A model generated the notes under the pieces. The model did no database searches. It had not been told where the DNA came from and worked only from the letters and a program-made list of their open reading frames with translations. Made by a program: the position numbers and the translations under genes. A stretch of DNA of 64,000 nucleotides, from the NCBI GenBank assembly GCA_029953675.1, contig JAMWBK010000005.1, positions 186,001 through 250,000 on the forward strand, written 5' to 3'. The DNA is from Rhodosorus marinus CCMP1338. Lineage: Eukaryota; Plantae; Rhodophyta. Within the stretch, counting starts at the first letter, position 1, and each line of letters begins with the position of its first letter. This document shows, in pieces, positions 15,601 through 52,695 of this stretch.

Positions 15601-16509
15601 TCAAAGTGTGTTGTGCAGTTGCTCCTAGCTCAGTCGGTCCTCGACACGGTCGTCATGAATTACGGTCGGCTATCGGCTGCACAGGTGCTTTGCTTGGCGA
15701 ACCTCCTGGAAGAGAGTTATGCATTTGCTCGTGATTTTAACGCGAATTCGGAGCTCAGATTTGCTCTTTGGCGTGCCGGTTTCATGACCCAAGTTCCAAA
15801 CTTGTTGAAGCAAGAGACAACCTGCTTGCAGGCCTATGTTCAGATTCTATTCTGGCTTGCTGCGGATGAGGGCTCGGTCGAGGGAGCAGCTCCTAAGGAA
15901 CTGCTGCTGGACACCTGTAAGATGTTCCTGGCAAAGTACGCCGAGGTTTGCAGCTCACCGCGCGGAAAGAATGGCAGAGATGATGCGAGAGAACTCGGCG
16001 CGCGAACTGCGATTGCAATTTTCATGATTGAGGGCTTCGTGCATGTTTCAGAGGAAATCTTTGAAAGCGTTCTGCAGACCTTTTGGGGAACTTTCGTGAC
16101 GCTTCTCCGGGTTAGCGAGTCCAGGAACCTAAGAGATGCCGTTTGTGATATTTTGGACAAACGAGTATCTTCTACACTTGTTATGAACTCGGAGGGGTCG
16201 TTCTCACCAGATCCCAAAAGGCCTGGTGACCGGCGAGTGCTAAATTTCACAGTGAAGGATCCGAACAAGACTGAGCATATGCAAAAGGCCGTTGAAGAGA
16301 TGGATGGTGTCATATCGGCAGAATTCGGTGAGGACCGAAAGAACTTGCGTGTTCTCGGCAGTGTCCCTGTCGCTGATGTTATTAGAAAGCTGGACGGTTT
16401 TTCGTCGGGTTCTGTCTTTACCTCAGGGGGAGCCGCACCATTCGTACAGCTGCAATCCCGACCTGTCATCACTGAGGAGCCAGACTCAGGTCCAGCATCT
16501 TCCACTTGA
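9613..16509 (+). CDS. BIG/Sec7-family ARF guanine nucleotide exchange factor (DCB, HUS, Sec7, HDS domains), multi-exon
   Basis: HUS box FLNYDCD. Sec7 domain [13 protein letters not shown]...VGEYLGE...[18 protein letters not shown]...[20 protein letters not shown], with the Glu finger intact. HDS motifs [11 protein letters not shown] and [21 protein letters not shown]. Several GT-AG introns; not every boundary was resolved. Confidence 0.93.
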
Positions 16510-18806: not shown

Positions 18807-21800
18807 ATGGATGGGGTTGAACATAGCTCGGATACCTTCACCCATGAACGCCATGGTCACGAAGATCCGAACAGCATCGAAAATGACTTGTCACCGCCGA
18901 ACAGTTGCGGCGTATTAGAGTCCAGTCCTGACCTGGCTCGAGTCCTGGGAGAAATTCTGCATGAATGCAGCCTGGTTACGGACAGAACAAAAGTCGCAAG
19001 GTTGAACAGGCTTGACCGCATAAAAGCTATTGACTCACGGATACATGCGAGAGAGGCAGCCTCGAACGCTTACAAATTTAGTACTGGACAGTCAAGCACG
19101 GGCAATGAAGCACTCAAAGTTCTTCATCACCCGAGCCCGGCAGTCCCAGGAATTCAACTCTTCCCAACTAAGAGAGTAGAAGCGGCAGCAACTAGACTAA
19201 TTGAGGAATCCTCAAAGGTAAGAGTTCATTCATTGATGTTGTCCTGTTTTCTAAGCGAGTTGATCTGATATCATGTGAATTCTAACTCGGCGTCAAGGTC
19301 GTACAAGAGGACCAAACGTTGAAGAGAGCCACTGAAGTCACCAAGCGAAACGCGATTATTGCGAGAGAGAGACTTCCCAAACAACCCGAAGCACCGCGGT
19401 TGAAGAGTCACTGGGATTTCTTGCTAGATGAAATGCTCTGGACGTCAACCGATTTCAAGGCTGAGCGTCAGTGGAAACTGGACTTGGCAGCCAAGGTTTC
19501 CAAGATTATTTCCGTATACTGGGAATCGAGGGTTGCGAAGAGACATTGTTGTGACAGCGAAGACTCCACAGCCTGTCAATTGGTGGCACGGCAAATGGGG
19601 GCGATGGTCGAAGACTTCTGGGACGAGGCGTCTTACCTTTGGAGCCCGAGACAAAAGGGAGAGGAAGATGAGTCCTCGGAGAGCACTTCCGACCGAAGCT
19701 GTGCTCTTGTGAAAAGAGAGACCGTGACCACTAGTAAATCAGGAGGACCTGGGGTAATTGTAGCTCCGGAAATGGAGGGAAGCGTCAACGCACCTGGCCA
19801 GGTTGAGAACGAAAACGTTAGGGATCTTGTCGATGTGCTAAAGGAAGAAGCGGCTATGGATATTCGAGACGTGCTGAAGAGACGAGCGGTTGATCTGGAT
19901 GATTATTGGGACGAAACGGGAGCTACGGTTACTGGATCGGGGGCTGAGGTCTCTGACGAACAAGTGCAAGGGAACACGAGCAAACCCTCGACGAGCGGTG
20001 TGGACCAGCGCGAGGGACAACCAACTACCGACTTGAGCCATATGGCGAAAATCTCCCCGGCAGCATCAGTGCACAATACCTCGAAGGCGGCGGAGTTAAA
20101 TCATGGTCCAGGAATGAATCATGTTGATGTAGACATTAAGGATGTTCCTCGAATTTTTGCTGAACACCGGCGACGTTCAGGACCAAGTCTCAGCGCGTGC
20201 CAGACGTTCCCAACCTCAGAATTGTTCCTTGCGAAGCCCGCAGATTCGGAGGACAGGACTCTAGCTAACCACACTAACAAGAGCCTTCTGAGAGGGACTG
20301 TTGACGACTCTGCGGACAATTTACTCGTTCGCTCTTTAATGGACTTGCATTCGAGACGACTGGGTTGTATTTTGAGTAGCAATTCGGCCGAGACAAGGCG
20401 CGATGCAGTAGGGCGATTGCTGCTGACGTAAGTTTATGTGCGCCTACTCTCCGTGCCGGAATGATAGGCGCTGAGTCGCGGTTGTATCTTCTACTACTTC
20501 GTTTTTAGGTTGGCTGAAAGCCGAGGGCGATGGGGTCCGCATCTCATAGTAGTGCCTTCGGCAACCATAGGCTTGTGGGAGCGCGACTTACTTTCCGTAG
20601 GATCTGCGTTGGTAGCAATTATTTACAAAGGCGACGAACCTATTAGGAGTCGATTGCGGGTTTGTTGCAGTAGTCCACTCTCTTTTAACGTGATGGTTGC
20701 TCCGTACCAATACTTTGTCTCCGACATGAAGTGGTTTGTGAAGCGAGCTTGGGATCTGGTTGTGCTGGATGAGTCTCAACGGCTGAGAAATTACGCAAAG
20801 CTGGTGCCGCTACGGAGGTGGTCTACGATCCTCCTGCGGAACCCGGATCCTCTCGCGACAAACGTCCCGGAGCTGTGGGCTGTTGTGAGGGTTCTTCTGC
20901 CTGAGCTTCTTCAAGACTCGAGCATGCGAGCTGCTTTCAAATCTGCCAGTCAGGACAGAGGAGAATTCGTCAAGCAACTCCAGGATGGTATTGCTCAGTT
21001 CCGGGTAGGGACAGACCTCTCCCCGGAGACAATCGACTTCTCGGAAGAGAGTGTAGAATGCGATATGTCATTGAGGGAACGAAAGGTGTATCAATCTGTT
21101 GTACCAACTGGAGAGAAGCTCTCGGATTTAAGTCAAATCCAGATTTTGAAGACACTGAAGGGATTGAGGCGAGCTTGCAGTCACCCCTTCCTGATTGGTG
21201 GGGTTGGAGATAGCTGTACAATATTTCAGGATCCACTGGGAATTGCGCTCCCTGTATCGCTGTTGGAAATTGTGCGGAGGCCACAGAAGAGATTGCTTCG
21301 GATGGACAGTCCGAAGAGTCTTTTGCTAACGCGAGATCTTGTTGCACATACTCGTGAATCCGGCTTTTTGGATAGAGTGGAGAACCTTGAAGAGGCTGAT
21401 GATTTGCAGATAAGGAAGCGTCGTGAATCGGACGCCCAGAATGGGAAAGAGGGAGGACTCGATACCGTACATGCCAAGGACTCGCTTGGAAAAGACACTG
21501 CGACGAATAGCAGAGAAAGACGGGTAAGTTACTGTCGGTACTGAATACTTGTTTCGAAGCGAGAGCTTTGTCCGGCTAAACGGTGCGGTTGTCCATTCTG
21601 AGCAGACGAAGGGGCGACTTTGCGATGTGGAGAGTTTGGAAACGAGCATCGCGGAGCGGTTAGGTTTCTGCTTTCCCGGTCATAATATTCTACATTTTTT
21701 TGTAGAACCAGTCGCAGCCGGAACGCCAACTCTTTACACAATGGACGGAAGAGACGAAACGGCGGGTTTGGAGGCAGCCTTGATTGGAAAGAGTGCTGAG

Positions 21801-24800
21801 CTTTTCCCTGCCGGGGACTCCAACGTGCACTATCTACCTAGAACACCACCGGTATTTCAGCTCTTAAGTACGAAGATACGATGCCTTCTGCGACTTCTTG
21901 ACGAATTTGAGTCGAAGTCTAAGCGTTGTATGGTCGTCACAAGAATACCTGGTATGGACGAGCTGCTTGAGCGCTTCTTTGCGGCTTCAAGAATCTCTTA
22001 CGAGACAATCGACGCATCTATGTCAGCTAGAGAGCTAGAAGACGTTGTAGAGAGGGTCAACAACGTTGGCCCGCGATGTTTATTGTATGCGGCTGATTTC
22101 CCAAAGTGGTTTCACGAGGTAGCTGTTCGAAACACGACGGAGATAGTCTTGATGGATGGCCCGGACACTGGGGCCTTTGTCCATTCCATCGTTTCCATGC
22201 TGGACTGGTCTGGAGTGGGCAACGAAATCACTGTACATTCATTGACCGTGAAGGACACCGTGGAAGATAGAAGGATTTCTGAGGCACAGGACCTGAAGCC
22301 CAGTCTCTTTTCACAGCTTACTCGTCGCGCAGACGATATTTGCTCTTCGGTTGCGTCAACGCTGAACGTGGATGCGGAAGTCTTGAGGCTTAGTTTGCAA
22401 TCGCTTGATCATGGTGTCTACGAGAAGCGCTTCATTGACAATGAGAATGTTTGGGGAGCTTATCGCAGGGACTTTGCTGCCTTTGAGTCGCCACCGATGG
22501 AAATCGATTTTTCGCTGCAGTCGGCCGAAGATTGTGTGGAGCCCAATCAAATTGAGAGGTACCTCAAGCGAGTTCTGCTACTGATGACCACTTCCGAGGA
22601 ATACGGCTGGAGCCCTGGTTCCGCGAAGATCGTTGACAAACAGCAAAAATCAGACTGGGGAATAGTTTTTGACTATTTGAAGTCCTTAACATCAGCCACG
22701 ACGACGAATACGAATCAGAACTTGCAGTACGCTGCACCGCCTCTGTTTTACACGATTCAGAAGACTGCGGAAGGAATGGAACAGCTGAGACGAGCGCTTT
22801 CGCGGGAGGAAGAGGAGTTTCGTGTTTACAGCGCTCCTCGTAGCTCTGGTAGTGATGAGCTCTTGTTTACACCCTTTGGAGGGACCTGGTCAGCCGTGGA
22901 GTCCGCCGAAGACCTCGGATTCTTTCCTCATGCCTACCATAGACTTGCAAGGACGAATCGAGTTACACGCAGGCAGAAAGAGACCAGTGCTGCTCGCTTA
23001 AAGGCAGAGCAGCAAGAGAAGGCTTCTGCGGAGCTGAAATTGTCGGACGCAATGAAAAATCCGATAAAGACCAAGGGGCAAAATGACTCGTCCGATGTTA
23101 AACTCGGCACTGCCAAAGGTAATGCGTTTGTGGCCCTATGCGGAACTGGACCACGAACTTGGAGATCATTGCTGACAGCTGGTTTTTCCAAACATATCTC
23201 CACTCAAGGTCATCTAGGCGCAATCTCCAGAAAACAAGTTCGAAAGTCCAAGACGAAGAAGGACAAAGGAATTGCTTTGGACTCCTCGGGGCTCGGGGCA
23301 CTCTCTAGGGAGCAATATGGTGAGGGAACCTCTGCGTTGGAAGGGCGGTCATCTGTCTCGCATGCCTCACTTGATCAAACCCTAGCCGGACGGAAATCTG
23401 TAGCTGAGCTGTCGTCAGAGGCTATGGAGCCTGTCGTACCCTGGACTCCGGAGGAAGATGCTGAAATCCTACTCGCCTGCGCGAAGTTGGGTTTGAACAA
23501 TGCGCTGCTGTGGGATTGGATGAGGCTGGCGCCCAGTTTCCACGCAGGCTGCCGCCAGTACAGATCACCACGACTGTACGCCGAACGGTACAAGCTGCTA
23601 GCGGGTAGAAAAGTGCAACCGTCAAACACCAACACGCCTGAGCAAGAGGTAGGTGGTGAAGCCTTTGTTGCTAATTCGATCACTTTCGATGAAGAGTAAG
23701 TGCTGACTCCTTTCTCATGCCTCTCCGCTGACTTCGAAATGAAGATCGTCTCCCTGCATCTTGACTCGATACTGAACAACGTCGAGAAAGGGAAAAGAAA
23801 AAAGAGTACCTCGGCGGCAATTGGGGGACAACCACACCCCTCTCAAGCAGCTGCGGCTGCCGCTGTGAAATTTTTGCCGGACAGAATTCCTGGACCATGG
23901 GAAATTGTGCAGCGGTTCAAGCCGTCGCAATCACACGTTCCTGGTCGGAAAGTCGAAGCTGCTGTGAGCAGAAAACGTCCGTTTCTATTTATGAGTTCGT
24001 ATCAAACCGAAACTCGAGGAGTTGGCGGAAACGCTGCAGTAGGCAGCCGCCCAGGTAGGAATTGCGTCCACTGCATGGCTGATCCAGAGACAGCACCAGA
24101 TTCGCCTTGTCCCAAACTTTCCAAGTCAGCGAGAATCCTGGGACGTCTTGCTAAGCTAGACCTCTGCTATTGACTCTTGTGGTTGTTCTAGTCACTAATG
24201 CCAATTCACACACGGCAGCATCCGGAAGCTCCGAGAGAACAGCTTCAGGTAAATCTGTGACAACGTTAGGAGCCTCAGTACCTCTTGCTGAATTTCTTCA
24301 CCGGCATCGCGTTTTTGGGAAATCATTTAGGAGTTGTGCAGGCACGAGCCCAAGCAACTGGAAAGAGAAGAAAAAAGGCCTCGAAGATGACAGCATCTGA
24401 TACCCGAGCGTTAGCTACCGGACAATCTCAGCCGGATTTAGCATCCGCTGCTGGCATGGGAGCCAGGCGAGGAATGCAACCAGCCTCGATTAGTCCGAAT
24501 TCGAATCAAGGGGTCCTCAAACACGACGTTGGCGTGGGTGGCTTTCAAGGTTATACCGGCGGTGGCATGATGGGTCTCAATCCTAAGGCCGTGCAATCCG
24601 TGCCCCAGCAATCGACGCCCTTCGGATCAGTTGGCATAGAAACCCATAGAGTTGGGACGTGGGGAACGGTGGGGGATTCCACCCCGATGACGAAAGGCAA
24701 TGCCAGTGGCCGAAGTGTGACTGGCAGTCGGGGAGCTGGCGGGCATGGTTCTTCAACGGCTACACGAGGAAGCTCTCGGGGACGCGGAGGATCTCGGGGG

Positions 24801-25280
24801 GGTACCAATCAGCGGGGAGGAGGGTCGCGCTCAGCTGTACATAGCGGACAAAATAAGGGAAAACCGGCTCTTCCGCAGGCTGCTAATAGTGCCGATCGTA
24901 TGCAATCGCTTTCGATGCAGCGATTTACGGCAGTCGGGAGAGGAGCGAACTTGCCCCATATCGGAGTAGGTGCAGGAAGGGCCATGGCGCAAATGGGAGC
25001 TGGAGGACCCCAGCAGACTTTTTTGCAAGGCCGGGGGGGTGGTTTGCAGGTCAACCACGGTTCCCTTGGAAAACCAGCAGTTGATCGGAATAAGAAAGCA
25101 CCTGTCGATCGTGGCGGGACACCTCAGCCTTTGGAAGCTGACCGAACGCCCGTGAGAGGTTCGAATGCACAGGCAGATGACAGTCGCAGTACCCACGGTG
25201 CGCTGAGTACTGGTGAAGGTCGTCCATCCAGCAAGGGAGGAAGTATCTCTCCGGGAAAACCGGTTGAAAACGATGATTAG
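18807..25280 (+). CDS. SWR1/EP400/PIE1-family protein: HSA domain, degenerate SNF2-like ATPase lobes, SANT/Myb domain, Gly/Arg-rich tail; multi-exon
   Basis: HSA: [25 protein letters not shown]. SNF2-like: WGPHLIVVP, WDLVVLDESQ, LRRACSHPFL, KIRCLLRLL...RCMVVTRIPGMDELLERF. SANT: PWTPEEDAEIL...QYRSPRLYAERYKLL. 3' exon boundaries are uncertain. Confidence 0.82.
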
Positions 25281-26664
25281 CCGAAGTTACTCAAGAGACC
25301 ATCACATATTAAGGGTAGCTCTATAGTGGAAAATTTCCGCTGGTGGTGGGCAAGGGAGTCGCGCATCGCTGAACTCTCAGCAAACAGGGCGTGGGGACAG
25401 GATGGACGCGATGTTAGGAGGTAGTACATTGGCTTTGCCTTTCTACCTATATGATGGAAGTTCTGAGGCCTCTTCGAGGGCGGCTTGAGCAACTGTATTC
25501 TGTAAACAATGTAAATAGATGATTTCTTACTAAAAGGTGCCCGTTTAACTAAGCCGGAGCTCGTTTCGTTGAGCGAGAGAGTCAACGGAGGCGAAAGGCC
25601 TAAGGCCCCTACAGCCGTTCGGCCACCCCGTGTTTTAACAGCATCGTGTAAAGAATGGCTTCCGTACTTTTTTCTGGAAACAGGCATTGCTTAGTGGGTT
25701 AGCAAAAATATTCCGCTTTCAGGACAGGTAGCGTGCGATACACGCACCCCGTCCCACATCGAAGTGGAGACCCGGAGTCATCATCAAAAAGCCAAATCTG
25801 GTAAAAATCATTCTCCTGGTGGAGGGACAGCTGTCCCAAATCGAACGGGTATTCTGACTGGAGCCTGAAGTCGTTACCAACATTTATGCTAGTCTCATAT
25901 CCACCCCTGTGATGATGTGGAAACGAATTCGGCCAAAACATCTAGATACGAATTGCTTCTTGTCGCAAGGGGATCCCCTGCAACTGGGACCCCCCCCTCC
26001 CCAACGTGGTTCAGAAACATATATTTGAGGGTTATACTTCAGTTTTTGAAAATTCTATTCGTTTTCTGAAATCGTGACAAGCCACCTTTCTGTTACATGT
26101 TCATGTCTGAAATTCCCCCCAAAACGAAACTACTGCAATAGCAAATTTGAGGCGTAGGGGGGAGGGGGAGATTTGACAGACCAGCAATTTCAAGGAGGTA
26201 ATTCAAAGTCACACTTTTCTCCCCTGCCCCTACACAAAACGCGTACTCAATCGATATACTAGAATATTTAGCTCCCGACCCGGCCTTGCTAGGGATTGCT
26301 TTGAGGGATACGAGGCTTGAACACATTCCCGCGACATTTGAACCTAGACGATTATTCCTCCAAAAACCATCATTGTCGCAGCTTAATGCTTGGAAAGTTG
26401 ATCCTGGTTGGGGGGGGGGGAACACAGGAAGCGTTTGAGGGAGATAAGCTCGTTTGAAGGAGGTAATGGAGCAATCTGGGATTCGTGTGTGGTTGGGTAT
26501 GGATGGGGTTGGGGAGTTGTGAATTAAGAATCTGAGGACCGTGGAGAAAGGAGAAGGATTCGGTAGTCCGCGGTACTTTCCAGAAGTGGTTTGGGGAATA
26601 TAGGGCGGAAATACCGTTCTGCTGTGTTTGCTCTTTGTACGGCTGCAGAAATTGATTCTGGACG

Positions 26665-29600
26665 ATGGCTGCCCGTGCCTTCTCCAGGTCATCATTCTCG
26701 AGGTCGAGATCGATCAAATCATATGGCTCGGAGGCAATCGATAAGCTCACTATCTTGAGGGATTTGCCGAAATCACGGTATGCGACCAGACCAGCAATCG
26801 TGGTCATTCCGCCACCCGGCTCGACCGCAAAGCCGCGGCAGTTCTCTCACATTGACATTTTCAAGATGGTGGAGAACGTTGCACATAGTTTGCGAGAGAA
26901 TGGTGTGCGCCCAAAAACAAAGGTTGTAACCGTGTTGCCACCCAATCTCGACGGAATCGTAGCCTTCTTTGCTTTGCAATGGGTGAACGCGGTAACCATC
27001 GCGTTGCAGCCCGATATGAGCGTGGAGACAATGCTTGAGCGTGTGAAAAGCAGCGGTGCTGAAATCGTTATAACCTCAGACGTTATAGAAGACGAGCGAG
27101 AGGCAAACGAGGTTTACCAAAAGGTGGTTCGCTTGAACTCTGAACTAAACGCGCTTGCTTGGCATGTCAGCTACAATAACATCTCAGGAGTTGAGCTTAA
27201 GACAGGCGGCAAATCGTTCGGGGTTCCTGCGTGGCGAGGGGGTTACAAGGACTTCACTGTAGAACCAACAGAGTTGTCCGTGTATACATTCTCTCCAGGC
27301 GCGGGCACAGATACGACTTTGGCCATAGGTCTTACACATGAAAACATCACCGCAGCAGCGAAAGCCTTCGTTGCTGCCTACGAACTGTTCGACGGTGAAG
27401 AGATGGTCATGGAAAGCAATTCCAGGACCGTTTTGACGTCAGACTTTAGCAGTGTGCAGGGAATATTGACTCTTGTCAGTTCCTTCTACGCGGGAGGCTC
27501 CTTGATTATGTATGAAAATGGCGAGTTTCGGCCAACCGAGTTCTGGGACCTTGCGCTAGCGCATGAGTTGACGTGGGTCAGCGTCAACCAAACTCAATTC
27601 AAAGTGCTGTACCACAAGAGAAAGGAAGGGGTTGTTCCGAGCAAGCTGAAATATATTAGAATATGCGATGACGATTTCCAGGACACAGCCGAGCAGCTCT
27701 CATACGAGAAAGTTCTTGGCTGTCACATTTTGGAGTCTTATGGTCCACCGGAGGCGTCTGGAATCGTCACCACTGAGGTTTTTAGTGAGGAGGTGCGAGG
27801 TACTCTAGGTGCAGCCGTGTTGGGATGTGAAGTAGCCGTCTTCGCCGCGGACAAGTCCAGACTAGAACAAGACGAGGAGGGCGATGTTGCTGTTCGTGGC
27901 TTGAGCGTTACATCCGGGTTCTTGAACGACGAGGAGGAGACAGCGTCGAGCATAATCACCATTAAGACAGCATTGGGAGACTCGACTTGGTTCCTGACCG
28001 GAGACAGGGGGAAAGTGGACGAGAGCGGGAGGCTTATCCTAACTGGCAGTGTACGAGGGGCGAGGGCCCAAGCTCGATTGCGGAGGGATGTGGAAGCCTC
28101 ATTCGAAGACTTGCCGCCAGAAGTAGAGGAGACAAAGGACTTAACTGGTGCTCCAGTTGCAGTCGCGAACGCGGTGGCAGCGGGTGCTGGTGCGACAGCG
28201 GTGCTAGCGAAGCCGGCTGACGACGCGAACAATGAGGGGAGACAGATTCGACGGCTGACTGAGGATGACATAAAGAAGGTCGGGCCAGATTGGTGCATTG
28301 TAACGCCGTTTCTCGGTATTCCAGCTGAAGATGACGATGTAGAAGAGAAGGTCGTTCTGATGAGGCGTGTATCGTCGGATGAGGTTGTTGAGATCTCGGA
28401 TCTCCCTGATTCAGTACCCTTGTCAAGTGGCCAGAACGATTCCTCGCAGAGTGCAAACATTGCCGCAGCTGAAGCTGCCGCAACGGCTGCCGCTGCAACA
28501 GCAGCTGCCAACGCAGCAGCAAGATCACAGGCAGACGGGCAGGTTACAAAGAAGATAGTCAAATTCGGCGGTGTTACTTACGAATATTTCTATACTCATG
28601 AAGACGAGGAGGAGATGTTGATGGAGCTCCTTGGCGATGACCATGAAGGCTCAGAGAAGAAGCGCTCTGTGAAGCTTCCACCAAAGTACCAAGGGGGATA
28701 CTTCACTGAAGAAGCAGACGAGAACGATAGGATTCAAGTAAGGATAATGACCACAGGGGAGGCAACCCAGTTTCGCAGGAAATTGGAACATGAGTTTGCC
28801 GCAAAATTGGAGGAGGAGAAGGGCAGAATGCGTACAGAATACGACGCTCTTCTTGCAGCGGCACTAGTTGAACAAGACTCCCAGTTTCAGCAAGTTTTTA
28901 CGGAGCAGAGCAAGAGTGTGCAAGAGGAGTACAACAGGAAATTTGACGAGGAGTCTCAGCAACAACTAGTTGAAGTTCAGAAGCGGTTGATAGAAGAATC
29001 GAAAGCCCGAAAGGAGATCTACGAACAGCTTTTGAGCGAGAACGGAGAGAAGGAGTTTTCGCAGGCGGAGAATACGCTACAAAGCAAAAGAGAGAAGGAT
29101 AGAACAGAGGTATTGGACCAATTAACTGCAATGAAGGGTGAGCTCACATTCGGAGTGTCATCTTACTTTAAGGGCGTGGATAATATGGATGATGTGGAAG
29201 CTTCAAAAGGGGGCGTATCTCGCTTCGATCGGACTGGAGACGCGAAGAAACCAGCTTTGCTGATGCTCATCAACGACCCTGAAAAAGTTCGTGACTCTCG
29301 GCCAGAACTCGACGCAGAGTTTCTGAAAAGAATGCAAGAAGCGAAGGAAGAGGAGAGCAGACTGTGGCGCGCTAGCGTAGTTGCCGACCTAAACAAGTCC
29401 GCGTTCTCGGTAATTCGGGACATTGAGGACAGGCACGCCATGGACCAAATGAGCTATGCAAAAATGCTGGAGAAGATTGAAGGGTTAAAGAAGACGCAGA
29501 GCGAGATGGAAGAGAACCTCTCATTGGCGAAGCAAGTTGAGGTGGACCGCGCCCGCGAGCTCGGTGAAGCATTAGCCGAGGAAAGAAAGAACATGGGAGC

Positions 29601-30444
29601 GCTCTCAGGTCGACTGGAAGTCGAAGCCATGGCGTCGAGAACTGAACCAGCGATCGCGACCACGAAGACGGACACTCTGGAAACGGCCATATCGGATACT
29701 ACCACCAGTGCCCATCAAACCAGCAAAGCAGCGTCAGAGACTGTGGCTTCGGTCCAAACCATGACGGTGGCCAGCGACAAGGCAATAGTTCAGGCAAGGA
29801 CGGCCTCAACAGCCGCCACAACCGGGTCTGACGCGACGGTTCGAGCTGCGGATGTTGTCAAGTTAGCGGCAAACCGTCAACCCGAGATGAAGGAGACTGT
29901 ACTTCGCGAAGTACTCCCTGGAGACGTTGTTGGTGAAAGGTTCAAGAAGAGAACCATTTCTGTGGATCTTCGATCTATTGACGAGGCCCTCAAGGCACAT
30001 CCTAGCGTTGCCGATGCGAGGGCCTTCACCACTCCAAATCGGAAGTCCACCTTCGATATTAGCGCTGTGGTCCAGTTGAAGGAAGGTATGCTATTTGCTC
30101 GCCCAACTGACCCGTCATTTTTTAGTGCATGCACCATTACCATGTTTTACAACCACTCATTGACGAACTCCTGTTCTCTTTGGTGACGCTTCGTGGTTGC
30201 AGGGGCTCGAGCGAGCGAGGCTTGGCTGAAACAGCACGCTTTGAATACCTTGCCAGTCGCTTCTGTACCTACTCGGTTCTTCTATACGACTACTTCGATT
30301 CCTCCGGGGAGGAAACAATTGGCCTGGAACCCTGATCTGCAGTTGTTCACAAATATCGCGGGTGAATCTCAAGCATACATTCCACCCAAGAGAGTGGAAA
30401 GAGCAGAGATCCACCCCGCCGAAACGCCGCAGGCCACGGCATGA
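26665..30444 (+). CDS. AMP-binding (ANL superfamily, AAE3/Pcs60 oxalate-CoA-ligase-like) protein with a ~630-aa insertion; probable pseudoenzyme, about 1220 aa
   Basis: Exons 26665-30085 and 30203-30444 (intron 30086-30202, in frame). The N-domain has LTHENI, ILESYGPPEASG and WFLTGDRGKVDESGRLILTG. The small C-subdomain SIDEALKAHPSVADARAF...AVVQLKEG...WLKQHALNTLPVASVPTRFF only resumes at about 29950. Confidence 0.85.
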
Positions 30445-30976
30445 TGGTGTGATTGTGTATCGGTGTATGATGCGCTTTCTGCTTTCGAAAGAGGAGCATT
30501 TCCTTGTTTTAAGTGTATACGCTTGAATTTTTGGGTTAGATTTTGGTTCTCGGATAAATCGATGCGTTCGGTGGATGGAGGTCAATGGAACTGCTGCTGC
30601 CATGCCTTTCGAGCAGTGAGGCCGTCTGTGAACCCCAGACAGGGAGGACGCCCTAGCGATGGTACGCCATGCATGAGACCGCCGTGCATGAAACGAGAGG
30701 AACAAGGAGAAACAGCACAATTTGAGCATCCCACGTGTTACTGCTAGCAATCCCTTTCATGTCATGTGGCAATTGTGACTAAGGCATTCCCACGGCCTTC
30801 CGCGCAAACAAGGCCGGTTCAGCTCGAGACTATGATTGCGGTGCATGCTCGACCGATCAGAAGGCCCCAATGGGGGCACTGAAGGATGTACATAGCTTGG
30901 GGTACAGTTTGCTTGGCAAAAGTGTAAGAACAGGCTAATTTTCATGGGGAATAAACTGCTATGATAGTCGTTTTAC

Positions 30977-33900
30977 TCAAATGGTCAACTCCTGATCGAT
31001 TCCAACAAAACTATCAGACATTATGTACAAACGGAGCTTAGCTACATTTTCGATCCTGCTCGATAACAACAGGTGCGTCCGATGGACCCCGTGATCCAAC
31101 TTTCGTGGGAGACGCTTAATCGCATAAAGCTCATCTGCAAGAGGATCGCCCAGAACGAGATACCATGAATCTTTGACAGTCATTTCCTTGCGTGACGTAA
31201 AGGACGTAGAAACTTCAACTCCCTTTGCGTCCTCTTGCAATCGAGTTTTCACAGTTGGTATCGAGATCCGACTCCTAAACAGCATGACCTAAGAGAAAAA
31301 GAAGAACCTCATATATTAGCTCCAGCCATTCAGAAGAACAAGGTGAGTGTTCCTTTCCGTACCTGATCAATGCTTTCGCGGGGGATCTTCCTCTTACGCA
31401 ACTCCTTCTCCAGCTCTGCCGCCGGATAAAACAAGAGTTCGGGAACACAGACAATACCAATCTTCAGGAACGCTTGGCGTACGCGATCGCGATGCGACTT
31501 GTTGACGAAACCCAGTGGAAGAGGACTTTCCGAAGCCCACTCGCTCTGTGTTAACTGCTGCGCCAAGTGAACACATCTCAGCGTAGTATGTAGCATGCCG
31601 CTTTCAGCAGCTACATCCATCATCCCCTGCAACACTCGATACATGTTGTCTTGGACGATATTTGTTCCATAGTCTACGGTCGGTAAAGGAAGTCGCGAGA
31701 TCTGCGCAACAAGAAGGAGACGAGTTTTGACATGTGGGGAAAACCAGTCCGGGACAGGGCTCTTTGGAAGGAGCTCTTCCGCGGGGGCGTCGCGGTCAAC
31801 GAAGTTTTGATACATATCCATCCACAACTCCTCCGCTAGACGATCTTCATTGTGGCGGACGGGAACCTCAGCGAACTCGTCAGCATCAGCCAGCAAGTTG
31901 AGCAGGGCCCCATCTCCGATCGACCTGGACAGCCTCCCTGAGAAGTGGTGCATCGTCCTGTGAGAGAGATAATAGTACGCTGCAATATGCCCAAGAGGTA
32001 GTGGGCGAAGCAGGAAAGTTTCCGCCCCCGCACAGGAGCGGCTCTGCTTTGGATTCGCGATGTGCATCTCCTGTACAATTGAAGAATGCTTGTTTGAAAC
32101 CCCAGGTTCCAGCGAGCGTACTTTCTGTGCCTCTTCCAGTACTGAGAAGGGCTCAACTACTGCGATACACCCAGCAGCCACCAGCTTGTGCAGAACCGTT
32201 TCCACCAAGTTTGACAAAAAAGTCGAAATCGAAGAAGCTGATGGCTTCTCCAAACCGTAGAAAGAAGGGTTCATAAGCAGCCGACGGAAGAAATATGTCC
32301 AAGTTAAATAGTCCATCGCATCTTGTGTTGTTCTAATCGTCTCGCTCGCAATCTCCGCATTAATATGATCAGCCAACTGAGCTGGGAGCGATGATTCAAC
32401 CGGGAAAGCCTCATACAGGAACTTCTTGTAGAAGCCCTTTCGAGGTTCGTGCACTAGCAGGACGGCGAATGCGCGATCATCGAATTGGGGACGCCCAGCT
32501 CTCCCAATCATCTGAAGAACGTCGGTGAGAGGCATATCAACGTATCTGTGCTGTTTTGCGTCGAAGAATTCAGTTCCTTTCAGCACTACCAAGTGCGCTG
32601 GGAGGTTCACCCCCCACGCGAGCGTACTCGTGCTTATCAGAACTTGAATCTCGGCAGACGCAAACAACGCTTCCACAGTGGCACGATCGGACTCTGCCAG
32701 ACCAGCGTGGTGCATCCCTACTCCAAACTCCAGGGTCTGTCTTAGTGATTCGTCCTTCACCGAGGGAAGAATTCCTTCCAACGTGCTCTCGTTTGCTGAT
32801 CTACCTTGAGCCAAGAATCGCCTTGGGGACCCGTCAGCAGCGGCGAACTTAACCAGGTCCATCGCCGTGAGCCTGGTCTGCCTTCTTGAAGAGACAAAAA
32901 TCAGGCAAGGCTTGTCTGGAGAGTATCTCAAAATTGCCGCGTAGCTCGGGCGATTCATGGCCATCATTCTCGGACAGTAGTGATCACCGGACACCCCTTG
33001 TATATGTACCTCACAAGGGACTGGCCTCACCGAAGGACGGAAATTGAACAGTGATTCTCCAGGGCGAACTCCGATCCAATCGCCTAGCTCGCCTGGATTC
33101 GCCAGCGCTGTCGATAAAGCAACAATCCGAACAGATGAATCCAGCCTCCGAGCCCTGGAAACAAGCACTTCAAGAACGGCTCCCCTCTCGGAGCACAGGA
33201 GATGAACCTCATCAATGATCAATAGGGAAACGCGGCTTACATAAGCCCGTTGTCTCCAACCTCGAGTAACGCCGTCCCACTTCTCAGGTGTCGTTACTAC
33301 AACATCCGCTCTGCCTAGCTCAGATGCGCTGCTTTGTGCGTCTCCAGTTAGCTCCACCACTCGCTTTCCGAGTTTCCGCGAGAGGCGGTTCTTCCAGTCC
33401 TTAACACGCTCTCGGACTAGAGCCTTAAGGGGCGCGACGTAGACAACAAGGTCCTTCGGGCGAACTCGAAAGGCCCTCAGAGCAGCCAACTCCGCAGTTA
33501 CAGTCTTCCCTGATCCAGTTGGAGCCCCAACAAGCACGTTGCTGTCCGTGTGGTACAAAGTCCAAAACATCTGAGTTTGCAGAGCGTTAAAGTATTCAAA
33601 CGAGTACAGCGATAACACCGCTGGATCAGTGCCCAACGCGCTCTTCGGCAGAGGTCGCAGATCCAGTAAATCAGTGCTTATTGGATGCTGCTGCGGGAGA
33701 GTAACGCCTGCAAGAGACAATGTCACGGCTGTCCCCGCTCCGTGCCACCTCTCGGACTCAACGCTCACAACGTAGTGAGAAGACGGTGGGTCAAAAACCG
33801 GGACCATCAGCACCAGCGACAGTGGGTTCAGCTCGCTCAAATCCTTACACTGCCTCCGGGAAAGGCTAATGCGCTCAGTGTGGTATATTCTGTCATGCTC

Positions 33901-36900
33901 CGTGTCCTCCACCCACAATCGCCACAACTGTACTTCCTTACCGTGCACCGAATCTGACCACGTGAAGCCAGGCCACAGCTCAACGTTGATGCGTAAAACA
34001 GAGCGGGTAACTGGGACGACTGCTGCGCTCACATACAGTACCGGAATACACCTCAAGGCACGGCGTACTTGGGCAGCCACCTTCGCAGATCCTACTACAC
34101 TGATGAGTTCCCCGTGCGTACATTCTAAGAGTGACTCGACGTCCCCAGCAGGTCCCATATGGGCAAGTTGGTTGCAGGTTTCAGGAGGAACATACTCAGG
34201 CCTTCGGCGATCGTCTGAGAATTGGGCAAGAGGGTGGCTAAAAGGCCACAGCCGACGATCAATTGCGCGAGAGAGCTCTAGAGCCAGTAGCGCCACAGAA
34301 GGCCAACCCTTCCTTACTGCAGTTTCAAAGAGCGCTCGCATTAGTCGAGCTGCACTTTGTGCCACATAGTTTTGATCTGAAACAAGCGAAAAGCTTCGAA
34401 TCGGAGCACGGGATATATACCCCTGTAACAGAGTCACAGCTTTCCCTGCGTACGTGTCCAGACCGGCGCTCACTGAAACCTCGCACGCGTGACGTTCCAA
34501 ACTGGTAAGCTCCTCCATCTCTTCCTCTCGTGGCTTTACTTGCTCGAACTCGCTTGCATTCGCAACGGCAAGGAGGACTTCGGAATCCTTTGAATCGCCA
34601 GCGAGATTCTCGTTCCAAGAAGAAATTGTCCCATGTGAAACGTAGAAGTGGGACGCAACCCGTCCTAGCTCTGTTGGTGCAAGTTCCTCCGACTTCTCGT
34701 CGAAACGGATCATTCTCGCCGAATTAAGAGCCCGAGCCGCTTCCAGAATAAGCGTTCTCCGAGCTTGAACGAGCTCAGGGTCTGTGACCACCTCGTCCCA
34801 GCGACACCCGTAGTGAAGTGGGTTCCTTTTCATCCTTACTGCCATGTACGTATAACCGAGCCACTGAACCGCCTCGGCTACTGAGGAAACCGTTCCGAGC
34901 ACCACTTCGGCGTTCAGATGGTCGGGAAGGAGTCCGCCTTGCTGAAGTCGCGATTCTATCGGAAGTGAAGAAGTAAGAAACCGCAAATAATGAGGCAACT
35001 GCTCAGAGCTCGTTATGATAGTCCCTTCCCCGAAAGTGTCGAATTGCGGTCTCCCAGCACGCCCGAATATCTGCATAACGTCAAGCATACTCAGCTCCAC
35101 GAAGCCTCCTCTCTTTGCGTCATATATCTGCGTTCCTTTTATTATCACGGTGTGAGCCGGCAAGTTCACCCCCCAAGCGAGAGTCGCAGTGCACACGATA
35201 ACTTGTAGGACTCCTTCTAGGAACAGCCTCTCAACAAGCTTTCGATCCGCTCGAAGCATGCCCGCATGGTGGATGCAGACCCCTTTTAATGCCAGCATGC
35301 GCAGTTCGTTAGCACGAAACTTGGTTATCTCCTGCCGCGCCCAACTAGGGATTGGCTCAGCACTAGAATTATCATCTGCGGTCTTAGCGTCCCCGCTGTC
35401 GAGAAGCTTTCTCTCCACTAAGTCCTTCGCCGTCGCGAGGGTGTCCTTTCTGGAGTGAACAAAGACCATACACTGGTTTCCCTCTCCCAGAGAAGCTCTG
35501 AGTTTATCGAAGGTAATATCCAGGTATTTCTCGTTTCTCTTCTGTGGATTTTTCCCCTCAACGCCAATGAAAGTCTGCGACAGAGGGACAGGACGAAAAG
35601 ACGAGTCAAAGAAGAAAAGCCCCTCATCGCCTACTCCCAGGAACTTTGCGACATCCCGATAGTTCGGGAGGGTTGCCGAAAGTCCAACTAAACGTATCAT
35701 CCTCTGTTCACTTTCTGAGCGACGCTGTGTGCGCGCAACCAACGATTCAAGCACGGATCCCCTGTCCTCATGCAAAAGATGGACCTCGTCGATGATCAGC
35801 AGCGACACGTCCTCAGCAACTGAGGAACCTCCCTCCCCTCCTCCTTTCCTTGTAACTACATCCCACTTTTCCGGAGTAACAACGACTACTTGCGTTTTCA
35901 AAGCCTCTGCGCGAGACAAGTTCACGTCCCCGGTAAGCTCTCTCACCTGCAGACCGAGAGCGCCCAATCGCACTTGAAACTTTTCTACGATCTCGGCTGC
36001 TAGCGCCTTCATGGGTGCAACATAGACGGCTCTCCACCCTTGCGTTAACGGACGACCGTTTTCGTCAGAGAATCGCCGAGCTTCACGCAGGATAGTCATT
36101 AGAGCGATATTCGTTTTTCCAGCGCCCGTTGGGGCGCAGACGAGCATATTCTGACTGGATCTCAGGGCAATCATCCAGACTTTCGACTGAATTGGGTTTA
36201 GCATCTCTACTCCCTCCATCGCCGGCAGGAGCTCGGCTGGTAAAATCTTGCGAACTTCGACTGGATCAACTTTGTTTCTCGTGTCCATCCGCTGAGGGGG
36301 CATCACATATTCATCATATCCATCTTGAGTACTTCGCGTCATACCCTGTGGCAGCGCCATGCGGTCCAAAGAAACTTTGCTTTCCGCGGTGAAGTGCCGA
36401 AGGGCCTCGAGAATTACTGGGTCCTCGGTTTGCCCATATTCATCCTCTTCAGTTCTAGACTCGTTGTAGCGCTGTCGTTGCTTCTGACTTGCACTCTGAA
36501 AATCGACTATTTGGAACGAAGGTTGAGGGAATCCTGTGTTTCGCCGACTTCGACGAGTCCCACCAGCCGTGGAGTTGGTGGGCGGTGCCGCGTTTTCTCG
36601 CGCGAGAATTTCGGATTGGATCGAATACGCATTCGCCTTGATCTCGTTTCGGTGAACGAACATAGACGCTGCAGCCTCAAAATTCCCTAAGGCGTCGAAC
36701 AGATCTTCCTGGAGCTCATCATCTGACTTGCCGCTGACGACGATCTGCAGAATCGTACTTGCCATATCGAAAGGGTCCCACCAAGACCCGAGCTGTGCAG
36801 TCACCTGCATGCATTCTGAAAAAAGGTGAAAGGACCCATCCTCTCGATTGCTAACGACTTCTTCAGGATTTTGCCTGTTTTCGTCACACGGCCCCGGTAC

Positions 36901-37125
36901 AACTTCCCATTCCTCGTCACCTAAGGTAAACTCCTCCAAACCTTTGTACGCGGAAGACAACGAACCTGTCCAGTGCGTATCTGACGTACGCTGAGCATAT
37001 GGTTCTGCATTTGTTCCAGGACGAAAATTCGATCGAAGTGTGACCCACGCTTCGTAATCAAACCGCATTCCATCTTGCAGCTCTCGGAGGAGCTTTGAAA
37101 ACCTCACTACTTCGATGCTGGTCAT
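30977..37125 (-). CDS. ASCC3: ASCC3/Slh1 (Ski2-like double helicase cassette with Sec63 domains)
   Basis: Exons 37125-31363 and 31288-30977. Two cassettes, APTGAGKT/DEVH and APTGSGKT/DEVH. The signature HYCPRMMAMNRPSYAAI...LIFVSSRRQTRLTA favours ASCC3 over Brr2. Confidence 0.9.
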
Positions 37126-51454: not shown

Positions 51455-52695
51455 TTACGCAGATTTGGGCTTGGCCTGCGCAGCCTTGTTCTTCGACATT
51501 GAGTACAGGAACGTTCCAACGATTGCAACGATGCTTCCCACGGCATTGAGCGGCATTACCTTGGTCTTGAAGAAGACGATCGACGCACCAATAATGATGA
51601 CCCGCTTGATCGTGTTACCGACGGAGAACGTCACCGGGGATACGTTGCCGAGAGCGAGGTAAGACACCTCGTTGTAGAGGTGGTACAGCAGACAAGAGGA
51701 CATAAAGTACCGGAACAAAGTCGCGAAGGGAATTCCCGCTGCGACCATGGCCGGAATTCCATTGTCAAAATAAATTGCAAACGGTAGTTCCATGAGGAAC
51801 GCCATAATTGAAATCAGTCCATAGATGTTCTCGCTGGATAGAGTACTATCGCTCTTGTAATCCGCCATTGTAATCTTACTGAACACGTTCCTCATCGCGA
51901 AAGCAAAGTTGCTGATCATCGCGGTAATGAAGCCCATCCACGTGAAAGTCAGCTCAGTCGCGGAGGAGAGAGCGACACCAAAGATAATGGGTATCAACGT
52001 CAAGTAGACATAGAACGGGTACGCCTCGCCTAGAAAAGCGGCGGCGCATACTGCTCCGAACACGGGTTCTGCGGACTTGACAATGTGAGTAAATGAGATG
52101 GCCACGGAGGAGAAGCTTAGGCATGACATGATATGGCCCAGAGTATGAGCAGCAGCTGGCAAAGTCAGAGCCTTGAGCAATCCCCAAGAAACATTTGGCC
52201 TCTTTCTGGTGCCGATGAGCCATTGAATCGTGCAATAAGTCGCGCCAACACCGAGCTGAACGAGGGAGAGGGTCCATGGATAGGACCACATGTTCAGGGT
52301 CTGCTTGTTGATGATGTTAAAAATCACGTTCAGGAAGTACCACAGACCAAAGTAGAACCCAACCTTCATTGTGCTAGCTCCTCCGGTTGCCTCCGGTGCT
52401 GCGGAGGCCGAGCTAGCCAACAATTTCGTTGAGGAGCGGTCGAATTTACCCATTGGAAGCAGAGCGCATCGGGTGGGCGCAACTCGGCTCTGAGCAATGC
52501 GACCTAAGTATCGGTAAATGATGGGCACCGAGCACGACAAGCGAAAAGGTTAGAAAAAGCAAGATAACTTGTCATTTCGTTGAGGCGCCAAGCAGTGGCG
52601 TTACCTGCTCGCGTTTCCTTCTGCAGAGGGGTTGAGACCCATTGCGAACGCCCCAAAACACTCGATCCCGATCCCGCAACAAAACCAATAGCCAT
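51455..52695 (-). CDS. TPT: Plastid triose-phosphate/phosphate translocator (TPT family)
   Basis: Exon 1 (52695-52605) encodes the transit peptide MAIGFVAG...; intron 52604-52504. Motifs FGLWYFLNVIFNIINK, SFTHIVKSAEPVF, YHLYNEVSY and VGNTIKRVIII. Confidence 0.93.

What the first reader, a model, noticed from the sequence alone, without database searches (positions are those of the whole stretch)
26665..30444. Adenylating-enzyme homologue split at its hinge by a ~630-aa coiled-coil insertion, with catalytic motifs lost
Seen: an AAE3/Pcs60-like large domain ends at GDRGKVDESGRLILTGSVRG (about 28060), where ANL enzymes have the hinge motif GRxKD. The small C-subdomain resumes only at about 29950. 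In between lie acidic, Ala-rich, long coiled-coil (about 28780-29620) and Thr/Ser/Ala heptad-like segments. The P-loop (canonically TSGTTGxPKG) reads FSPGAGTDTTLAIG with no Lys. The FHVHG substrate motif reads FSSVQG, and the A10 region reads IPPGRKQL. There is no PTS1 tail. Known: ANL catalysis needs a ~140-degree rotation about this hinge. Inference: the fold has been repurposed as a non-catalytic ligand-sensing or structural head on a filament or tether protein. I could not check whether homologues are already described.
Basis: partly seen in the sequence, partly recalled or inferred. Interest (0 to 1): 0.8.

Follow-up and report, generated by a model that had tools for sequence, protein, structure and literature searches.

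The report
Red-algal dead ligase split by helical insert
This Rhodosorus marinus gene encodes a relative of oxalyl-CoA synthetase that has lost its ATP-handling motifs and is split just after its hinge by a roughly 630-residue, mostly helical insertion. The same layout is conserved in an undescribed protein family whose named members are all red algae.

Summary
The window is nuclear DNA of the red alga Rhodosorus marinus. One gene (26665-30085 plus 30203-30444, with a 117-nt intron) encodes a 1220-aa protein identical to NCBI's "hypothetical protein NDN08_001014".

Its N-terminal lobe is an AMP-binding domain, closest by sequence and by fold to oxalyl-CoA synthetase (AAE3/Pcs60). The small C-terminal lobe resumes about 630 residues after the hinge. 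A transcript from another strain is colinear with the genome except for the small intron, so the insertion is not spliced out.

An exhaustive HMMER search found about 20 cluster representatives with the same split. Every named member is a red alga (Rhodosorus, Compsopogon, Porphyridium, Porphyra, Neopyropia). All 25 members examined lack the P-loop. All 24 with an intact C-terminus lack the A10 Lys. All 24 with the hinge region present carry a 170-720-aa insertion there. The A5 Glu and A7 Asp are mostly kept.

dN/dS is 0.07 for the N lobe and 0.15 for the insertion. A conserved module inside the insertion scores 0.05.

This is most likely a non-catalytic pseudo-ligase with a helical spacer or oligomerisation arm. 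"Coiled coil", "filament" and "ligand sensor" remain unproven. No literature on the family was found.

The parts
26665..30085 (+). Exon 1 (aa 1-1140 plus the first base of codon 1141). The start ATG has in-frame stops upstream in the transcript.
   Evidence: product identical to NCBI NDN08_001014
30086..30202 (+). The only intron: 117 nt, GT..AG, phase 1. It lies inside the C-terminal lobe. It is retained in one MMETSP transcript isoform (P0003), which then ends early.
   Evidence: Transcript L003 is colinear with window 26487-30574, with this 117-nt gap as its only gap longer than 12 nt.
30203..30444 (+). Exon 2 (aa 1141-1220 and the stop codon).
26746..28068 (+). ANL large N-terminal lobe (aa 28-468; Pfam AMP-binding covers aa 41-420).
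   Evidence: Pfam E=5e-30. PDB 6qjz and 5ie0. Foldseek 5ie2, 6qjz and 8aff. AF2 pLDDT about 80. dN/dS 0.071.
27289..27330 (+). Degenerate A3 P-loop, FSPGAGTDTTLAIG (canonical TSGTTGxPKG). It has no Lys and carries a one-residue insertion.
   Evidence: Alignment to 6qjz. Lost and variable in length in all 25 members. AF2 pLDDT below 50 here.
27445..27462 (+). A4 region, FSSVQG (canonical FHVHG).
27733..27762 (+). A5 region, ESYGPPEASG (canonical GYGxTE). Tyr, Gly and Glu are kept; Thr is replaced by Pro.
27991..28071 (+). A7 TGD (kept) followed by the remnant of the A8 hinge, LILTGSVRGARAQ (canonical GRxKD). The insertion begins directly after this.
28069..29943 (+). Insertion of 625 aa (aa 469-1093) in the A8 hairpin just after the hinge.
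   Evidence: No Pfam domain. dN/dS 0.147. Present in mRNA.
28069..28233 (+). Acidic, Ala-rich linker (aa 469-523). It is the least constrained part.
   Evidence: dN/dS 0.43; AF2 pLDDT below 50
28234..28800 (+). Conserved module (aa 524-712) made of strands and helices, with an Ala-rich loop. It is shared only with P0004, P0026 (truncated copy P0005) and P0042. Its fold is unknown.
   Evidence: Alignment A3. dN/dS 0.051. AF2 model is low-confidence. No PDB match by sequence or fold.
28753..29172 (+). Long charged, Gln-rich helices (aa 697-789 and 795-836).
   Evidence: AF2 secondary structure. 37% charged residues and no significant heptad periodicity.
29314..29628 (+). Long helix (aa 884-988). 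It contains the Rhodosorus version (aa 931-954, nt 29455-29526) of the family-conserved helix ILxRLxxIExNQxxLE.
29629..29943 (+). Thr/Ser/Ala-rich segment (aa 989-1093) with a predicted helix at aa 1025-1069. It is the counterpart of the family-conserved Ala/Ser helix MDExExAVxxAAxSAE.
   Evidence: dN/dS 0.24
29944..30324 (+). ANL small C-terminal lobe (aa 1094-1181, interrupted by the intron).
   Evidence: PDB 5ie0 residues 425-493, E=0.004. BLASTP to the P0006 C-domain, E=7e-18. AF2 pLDDT about 85. 18 of 22 relatives hit Pfam AMP-binding_C.
30298..30321 (+). A10 remnant, IPPGRKQL. The SGK of PKTxSGK, including the catalytic Lys, is deleted; the following Arg is kept.
30325..30441 (+). C-terminal tail (aa 1182-1220) with no PTS1. 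Most relatives carry a conserved 'K(S/A)PxWxP' motif here.

Best explanation
The gene encodes a pseudoenzyme that arose from an oxalyl-CoA-synthetase-type (AAE3/Pcs60/FadD7-like) adenylate-forming ligase. All named members of its family are red algae.

Shown:
- Both ANL lobes are kept and are under purifying selection.
- The elements needed for adenylation are gone in every family member where the region is present. These are the P-loop that holds the ATP beta and gamma phosphates, the A10 Lys, and the canonical GRxKD hinge motif.
- The turn of the A8 hairpin just after the hinge has been expanded into a 170-720-residue, mostly helical, low-complexity insertion.

Inferred:
- The protein no longer makes acyl-AMP or acyl-CoA.
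- The two-lobed body serves as a binding or scaffolding head. It may still hold an adenosine-containing ligand, because the A5 Tyr/Glu and the A7 Asp persist.
- The insertion acts as an extended spacer and oligomerisation arm. Its family-conserved heptad helix, with a buried Asn-Gln, is the likeliest dimerisation element.
- In the Rhodosorus subclade, an added and strongly constrained module (aa 524-712) supplies a further interaction surface.
For: - Identity and gene model.
- Closest relatives by sequence, by fold and by NCBIfam. In NCBIfam the FadD7 family scores 133 bits against a cut-off of 650, and matches stop at aa 464.
- The C lobe is confirmed.
- An exhaustive HMMER search of 1.84 billion representatives found about 20 clusters of 834-1315 aa, nearly all matched in two separate stretches. 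The next hits are NRPS megasynthases.
- Named members are only red algae, from four classes.
- Motif table over 25 members against canonical references. A3 is lost in all 25. A10 SGK is deleted in all 24 with a C-terminus. The insertion is present in all 24 with the region. A5 Glu and A7 Asp are mostly kept.
- 22 of 22 members hit Pfam AMP-binding, 18 of 22 hit AMP-binding_C, and nothing hits the insertion.
- The family is monophyletic and sister to AAE3-like sequences in an NJ tree.
- dN/dS against a transcript from another strain: N lobe 0.071, insertion 0.147, module 0.051, C lobe 0.20.
- The transcript is colinear with the genome apart from one 117-nt intron.
- A full-length spliced MMETSP0011 transcript, P0019, exists.
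- The conserved helix shows an a/d pattern.
Against: - No biochemical data exist. Loss of canonical motifs does not exclude migrated catalytic residues or a different chemistry.
- The AF2 models of the insertion are low-confidence (pLDDT 30-70).
- The global heptad periodicity of the long helices is not significant, so the 'oligomerising arm' is weakly based.
- Nothing is known about localisation, partners or ligand.
- The taxon is unknown for most family members, which come from unnamed Logan and JGI contigs. Restriction to red algae is therefore inferred from the named members only.
Confidence: 0.55

Rival explanations
1. It is still an enzyme with non-canonical chemistry. It might use migrated residues, or catalyse only a thioester or transfer half-reaction on a pre-activated substrate. 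The insertion would then act as a regulatory or targeting element.
For: - The N lobe is very strongly constrained (dN/dS 0.071).
- The adenosine-pocket residues A5 Tyr/Glu and A7 Asp are retained, as is an invariant Arg after the A10 deletion.
- From general knowledge: interrupted NRPS A domains stay active despite 260-390-aa insertions (PMC8341866).
Against: - The P-loop is not merely substituted. It varies in length from about 8 to 45 residues across the family and is poorly ordered in the model.
- The A10 Lys is removed by a deletion in every member with a C-terminus.
- The A5 Thr is replaced by Pro in most members.
- No compensating invariant Lys specific to the family was seen in the C lobe.
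Confidence: 0.12
2. It is a pseudoenzyme partner that regulates or scaffolds the active oxalyl-CoA synthetase, or another ANL enzyme. It would do this by hetero-oligomerising through the conserved N lobe, and the insertion would anchor the complex.
For: - The closest structures include oligomeric Pcs60p/OCS (8atd 'hexamer', 8aff).
- The family is sister to AAE3-like sequences.
- Pseudoenzymes commonly regulate their active paralogues (general knowledge; reviews PMC5106787 and PMC10211241 were listed but not read in detail).
Against: No test was possible. Whether red algae keep a canonical AAE3 alongside this protein was not established here. Conservation of oligomer-interface residues was not examined.
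Confidence: 0.1
3. It is an artefact: two genes fused by annotation, an unspliced intron read as coding sequence, or a decaying pseudogene.
For: One MMETSP isoform (P0003) retains the small intron and ends early. Some database models of relatives are truncated: Porphyra OSX73901.1 at 216 aa and Neopyropia KAK1864852.1 at 660 aa.
Against: - The ORF is uninterrupted for 1173 codons.
- A transcript from another strain spans the whole gene, with only the 117-nt intron removed.
- A full-length 1226-aa MMETSP transcript exists.
- The insertion has dN/dS 0.15.
- The same split is seen in about 20 clusters.
Confidence: 0.02

Closest known systems
Oxalyl-CoA synthetase (plant AAE3, yeast Pcs60p, bacterial FadD7/MatB-like) of the ANL superfamily
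   Same: It is the best match by sequence (6qjz 7e-22, 5ie0), by fold (5ie2, 6qjz, 8aff) and by NCBIfam (FadD7 family). It is the sister group in the NJ tree. The two-lobe architecture and the A5 Glu, A6 and A7 TGD motifs are shared. The C lobe alone also hits AtAAE3 best.
   Different: - The A3 P-loop, the A10 Lys and the GRxKD hinge motif are lost.
- A 625-aa insertion sits in the A8 hairpin, where AAE3 has about 14 residues.
- There is no PTS1.
- There is an extra C-terminal tail.
- The NCBIfam score is far below the family cut-off (133 against 650 bits).
Interrupted adenylation domains of NRPSs (methyltransferase or other domains embedded in an A domain)
   Same: A large foreign segment of 260-390 aa is embedded inside an ANL-fold domain, most often in the C-terminal subdomain between a8 and a9 (PMC8341866).
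   Different: - Those insertions are catalytic domains in active bacterial or fungal assembly lines, and they sit at a2-a3, a6-a7 or a8-a9.
- Here the insertion lies inside a8 and is helical and low-complexity, with no recognisable domain.
- The host domain is stand-alone, eukaryotic and has lost its catalytic motifs.
Fatty acyl-AMP ligases (FAAL) with their insertion motif
   Same: This is an ANL variant in which an insertion changes what the domain-alternation cycle can do (own knowledge, not tested here).
   Different: The FAAL insertion is about 20 residues in the N-terminal domain, and the enzymes remain active adenylators with intact A3 and A10.
SMC/Rad50-type heads split by a long helical arm (topological analogy only)
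   Same: Two halves of one nucleotide-binding-fold head are separated in sequence by hundreds of helical residues (own knowledge).
   Different: The folds are unrelated. An antiparallel coiled coil is not demonstrated here. The ANL head here has lost its phosphate-binding loop.

Membership tests
ANL superfamily (class I adenylate-forming enzymes), by fold | Large N-terminal domain of the AMP-binding fold | tested here: met
   Pfam PF00501, E=5e-30, aa 41-420. Foldseek to 5ie2 and 6qjz, E about 1e-24.
ANL superfamily (class I adenylate-forming enzymes), by fold | Small C-terminal domain following a hinge | tested here: met
   Pfam PF13193 is below threshold in this protein (E=0.044). However, the region hits AtAAE3 residues 425-493 in PDB (E=0.004) and the P0006 C-domain (E=7e-18). 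18 of 22 relatives hit PF13193 at E<=0.01. The domain is separated from the hinge by 625 aa.
ANL superfamily, as an active enzyme | A3 P-loop [ST]SG[ST]TGxPKG | tested here: not met
   It reads SPGAGTDTTLAIG. It is lost and variable in length in all 25 members.
ANL superfamily, as an active enzyme | A10 catalytic Lys (PKTxSGK) | tested here: not met
   A 4-6-residue deletion removes SGK in all 24 members with an intact C-terminus.
ANL superfamily, as an active enzyme | A8 hinge motif GRxKD directly followed by the hairpin of the C lobe | tested here: not met
   It reads GSVRGARAQ and is then followed by the 625-aa insertion. An Arg at position +3 is common but not universal.
ANL superfamily, as an active enzyme | A5 GYGxTE and A7 (S/T)GD, which contact adenosine and Mg | tested here: inconclusive
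   A5 reads SYGPPE, with Tyr, Gly and Glu kept and Thr replaced by Pro. A7 TGD is kept.
ANL superfamily, as an active enzyme | ATP-dependent adenylation or thioesterification activity | not testable with these tools
   This needs ATP-PPi exchange and CoA-ligation assays.
Oxalyl-CoA synthetase (AAE3/Pcs60/FadD7) | Full-length match above the family threshold | tested here: not met
   NCBIfam NF004511 scores 133 bits against a cut-off of 650, covering profile positions 21-405 of 505 only. The canonical P0178 scores 461 bits over 13-504.
Oxalyl-CoA synthetase (AAE3/Pcs60/FadD7) | Peroxisomal PTS1 (Pcs60 type) | tested here: not met
   The C-terminus is ...PQATA. None of the relatives ends in an SKL-like tripeptide.
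Interrupted NRPS adenylation domains | A catalytic domain embedded at a2-a3, a6-a7 or a8-a9 within an NRPS module | tested here: not met
   The insertion is inside a8. It has no Pfam domain. There are no carrier or condensation domains. Definition from PMC8341866.
Coiled-coil proteins | Sustained heptad (3.5-residue) hydrophobic periodicity over the long helices | tested here: inconclusive
   The windowed a/d score stays below the 95th percentile of shuffles. Fourier power at 3.5 has p=0.05-0.9. Only the roughly 35-residue family-conserved helix shows a clear a/d pattern. No dedicated coiled-coil predictor was available.

The most novel reading that the evidence does not exclude
This is a pan-rhodophyte, previously undescribed class of ANL-derived mechanical or sensory protein. 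Ligand-dependent opening and closing of the two dead ligase lobes would be transmitted, through the A8 hairpin, into a long helical arm. In the Rhodosorus lineage it would also reach a novel alpha/beta module. The protein would thus act as a switchable tether or as a component of a red-alga-specific cellular structure.
Probability: 0.15. Interest if true: 0.8.

Novelty: new variant of a known kind. Interest (0 to 1): 0.55.

Why it matters
The ANL superfamily is a textbook case of catalysis by domain alternation about a hinge. I know of no described member that keeps both lobes under selection while it deletes the P-loop and A10 Lys and inserts hundreds of helical residues just after the hinge. 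The literature searches found none either.

If confirmed, this would be a clean example of a metabolic enzyme fold recruited to a non-catalytic role. It would also provide a lineage marker for red algae, and a new conserved module of unknown fold (aa 524-712). It also flags that current annotations such as 'acyl-CoA synthetase' or 'AMP-dependent synthetase/ligase' would mislead metabolic reconstructions for these genomes.

Tried and rejected
- A word-indexed search with the N+C alignment (A1) returned only three family members plus generic ligases. With the module alignment (A3) it returned nothing, not even the query's own proteins. Low-complexity words probably swamped the candidate list. 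The family was recovered only by the exhaustive HMMER search.
The window's own N+C concatenation was accepted instead.
- Fold of the inserted module: the AF2 model had mean pLDDT 51, the Foldseek PDB search gave E>1, and the PDB profile search gave only E of about 0.7 noise. No fold was assigned.
- Coiled-coil tests were crude, home-made and not significant, so I do not call the helices a coiled coil.
- Tandem repeats: only two tiny arrays were found. The Thr/Ser/Ala segment is not a DNA repeat.
- Literature searches found nothing on the family. I searched on red algae plus AMP-binding plus coiled-coil, on ANL pseudoenzymes, on oxalyl-CoA synthetase plus Rhodophyta, and on locus tags and accessions. 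The assembly accessions that carry P0046 could not be tied to a species.
- Gene-fusion, unspliced-intron and pseudogene readings were rejected.
- Genomic context was not pursued as evidence, because this is a eukaryotic nuclear locus with unrelated housekeeping neighbours.
Full report
**What is there.**
The window is nuclear DNA of the unicellular red alga Rhodosorus marinus. A 1173-codon ORF (26665-30186) continues across a GT..AG intron (30086-30202, 117 nt, phase 1) into 30203-30444. The 1220-aa product is 100% identical to NCBI 'hypothetical protein NDN08_001014 [Rhodosorus marinus]'.

A transcript contig from another strain (L003, JGI 3300016967) aligns colinearly to window 26487-30574. 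Its only gap longer than 12 nt is that 117-nt intron. A full-length spliced MMETSP0011 transcript (P0019, 1226 aa) also exists. So this is one gene, and the roughly 1.9-kb middle part is coding sequence in mature mRNA. The in-frame sequence upstream of the ATG in the transcript contains stops, so the N-terminus is complete.

- N lobe. Pfam AMP-binding covers aa 41-420 (E=5e-30). The nearest solved structures by sequence are oxalyl-CoA synthetases 6qjz (7e-22) and AtAAE3 5ie0. By fold they are 5ie2, 6qjz, 5ie0, Pcs60p 8aff and MatB 4fuq (E about 1e-24).
- NCBIfam. The best model is the FadD7 family, at 133 bits against a cut-off of 650. All matches stop at about aa 464.
- Net insertion. The alignment to AAE3 ends at ...LILTGSVR (aa 464), opposite GRIK. 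The C-terminal region alone (aa 1090-1197) hits only ANL C-domains in PDB, best AtAAE3 residues 425-493 (E=0.004). It aligns at E=7e-18 with the Pfam-validated AMP-binding_C of homologue P0006. AAE3 has 14 residues between these anchors and this protein has 644, so the net insertion is about 630 aa.
- Exact site. The insertion sits in the turn of the A8 hairpin, between '...GxxRxxR' and 'K(T)VxVxLxxVExAxxxHPxV'. That is a few residues after the hinge residue rather than at it.
- Motifs.

**Anatomy of the insertion (aa 469-1093).**
- An acidic, Ala-rich linker spans aa 469-523.
- A module with predicted strands and helices spans aa 524-712. It is interrupted by an Ala-rich loop.
- Long charged, Gln-rich helices span aa 697-789, 795-836 and 884-988.
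- A Thr/Ser/Ala-rich segment follows, with a helix at aa 1025-1069 (AF2).

In the model the N lobe has pLDDT about 80 and the C lobe about 85, but the insertion only 30-70. No Pfam family hits the insertion.

My heptad-register and Fourier tests found no significant 3.5-residue periodicity in the long helices, which are 37-39% charged. I therefore call them long helices, not a demonstrated coiled coil. There are no meaningful DNA tandem repeats.

**A family, not a one-off.**
I ran an exhaustive HMMER search with the window's N+C lobes against 1.84 billion representatives. It found about 20 clusters (at 50% identity) of 834-1315 aa, nearly all matched as two separate stretches. After these the list drops to NRPS megasynthases.

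Every member that carries a name is a red alga:
- Rhodosorus marinus (Stylonematophyceae)
- Compsopogon caeruleus (Compsopogonophyceae)
- Porphyridium aerugineum (Porphyridiophyceae)
- Porphyra umbilicalis and Neopyropia yezoensis (Bangiophyceae)

The rest are unnamed Logan, JGI or NCBI-assembly contigs.

I aligned 25 members against canonical references.
- The P-loop is lost in all 25 and varies in length from about 8 to 45 residues.
- The A10 SGK is deleted in all 24 members with a C-terminus.
- All 24 members with the hinge region carry a 170-720-aa insertion at the same place.
- The A5 Tyr-Gly...Glu and the A7 TGD are mostly kept.

Of 22 members scanned, 22 hit Pfam AMP-binding and 18 hit AMP-binding_C. 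In an NJ tree the family is monophyletic and sister to AAE3-like sequences.

Two helices of the insertion are conserved in nearly all members. The first is 'ILxRLxxIExNQxxLExxL..H..E', which shows an a/d heptad pattern over 4-5 heptads with Asn-Gln in the core. The second is 'P.V..V.MDExExAVxxAAxSAExS', just before the C lobe.

The aa 524-712 module is found only in a basal subclade: Rhodosorus, P0004, P0026 (truncated copy P0005) and P0042.

**Selection.**
Nei-Gojobori dN/dS between the window and transcript L003 (dS about 0.27) gives the following values:

| Region | dN/dS |
|---|---|
| N lobe | 0.071 |
| Whole insertion | 0.147 |
| Module, aa 524-712 | 0.051 |
| Long helices | 0.137 |
| Thr/Ser/Ala segment | 0.24 |
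| Linker | 0.43 |
| C lobe | 0.20 |

The insertion is therefore functional protein, and its module is the most constrained piece of the gene.

**How it most likely works.**
Shown: both ANL lobes persist under selection. The residues that bind the ATP phosphates and catalyse adenylation are deleted in every family member where the region is present. A long helical element has been built into the hairpin next to the hinge.

Inferred: the protein cannot adenylate, so it is a pseudoenzyme. Its bilobed body serves as a binding or scaffolding head and may still hold an adenosine-containing ligand. The insertion provides length and self-association through the conserved heptad helix. The Rhodosorus-clade module adds an interaction surface.

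I give this about 0.55. Rivals are residual or non-canonical catalysis (0.12), a regulator or scaffold of an active ANL paralogue (0.10), and an artefact or pseudogene (0.02).

**Comparison with known systems.**
- AAE3/Pcs60. This is the closest family, but the protein fails the features that define an active member (A3, A8, A10, family score threshold).
- Interrupted NRPS A domains. It resembles them only in having a large segment embedded near a8. Those insertions are catalytic, sit at a2-a3, a6-a7 or a8-a9, and leave the A domain active (PMC8341866).
- FAAL insertion motifs and SMC/Rad50 split heads. These are analogies from my own knowledge, not tested here.

**Novelty.**
Database names are only 'hypothetical protein', 'AMP-dependent synthetase/ligase domain' or 'acyl-CoA synthetase'. 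Full-text searches for the family, its accessions, or ANL pseudoenzymes in red algae found nothing. I rate it a new variant of a known kind, of moderate interest. It is a clear and conserved architectural oddity in a well-studied superfamily, but its function is still unknown.

**Limits.**
- The insertion and module models are low-confidence, and no fold could be assigned.
- Most members have no taxon name.
- I could not check whether a canonical AAE3 co-exists in these genomes.
- No dedicated coiled-coil predictor or targeting-peptide predictor was available.

Noticed in passing
window 30086-30202 (intron); protein P0003: One MMETSP transcript isoform retains the 117-nt intron. It would end at ...SLRNSSLW and so lack the last 80 residues of the C lobe, including the A10 remnant. 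This may be an assembly of unspliced RNA or a real isoform.
   Followed up: partly
window 28492-28522: A small 12-nt Ala/Thr-coding microrepeat lies in the Ala-rich loop of the insertion. Strains differ by a 12-nt indel at about 28501.
   Followed up: partly
window 9613-16509 (+): Three ORF pieces carry DCB, HUS and Sec7, then HDS, then BIG2_C domains. Together they form a BIG/GBF-type Arf-GEF gene interrupted by introns or frame changes.
   Followed up: partly
window 19319-25280 (+): HSA and SNF2 domains in consecutive ORFs are followed by a domain-less 716-aa ORF and a Gly/Ser/Arg-rich 331-aa ORF. This is probably one large SWI/SNF-type chromatin remodeller with a low-complexity tail. The gene model was not worked out.
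   Followed up: no
window 31330-37125 (-): A 1931-aa Brr2/SNRNP200-type double helicase (two DEAD/Helicase_C cassettes, two Sec63 domains, wHTH) is encoded as a single uninterrupted ORF. It converges on the 3' end of the studied gene.
   Followed up: partly
window 51455-52540 (-): This is a triose-phosphate/phosphate translocator family (TPT) gene, E=3.5e-97.
   Followed up: no
relatives P0210 (Porphyra umbilicalis OSX73901.1, 216 aa) and P0213 (Neopyropia yezoensis KAK1864852.1, 660 aa): Public gene models of the family in Bangiales look truncated or mis-spliced when compared with the 850-909-aa JGI/ENA versions (P0129, P0212). P0213 lacks the hinge region and most of the insertion.
   Followed up: partly
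C-terminal tails of relatives (e.g. P0007, P0040, P0034, P0033): Most family members share a short motif near the C-terminus, '(V/I)K(S/A)PxWxP', after the A10 remnant. Rhodosorus has YIPPKRVER there instead. It may be a linear interaction motif.
   Followed up: no
L001 8001-10370; L005 2189-4897: Genomic copies of two relatives (P0006, P0046) are single uninterrupted ORFs on contigs that also encode bZIP, RING and ribosomal L14e genes. P0046 occurs in two unannotated NCBI assemblies (GCA_013332695.1 and GCA_029976255.1) whose species I could not determine.
   Followed up: partly
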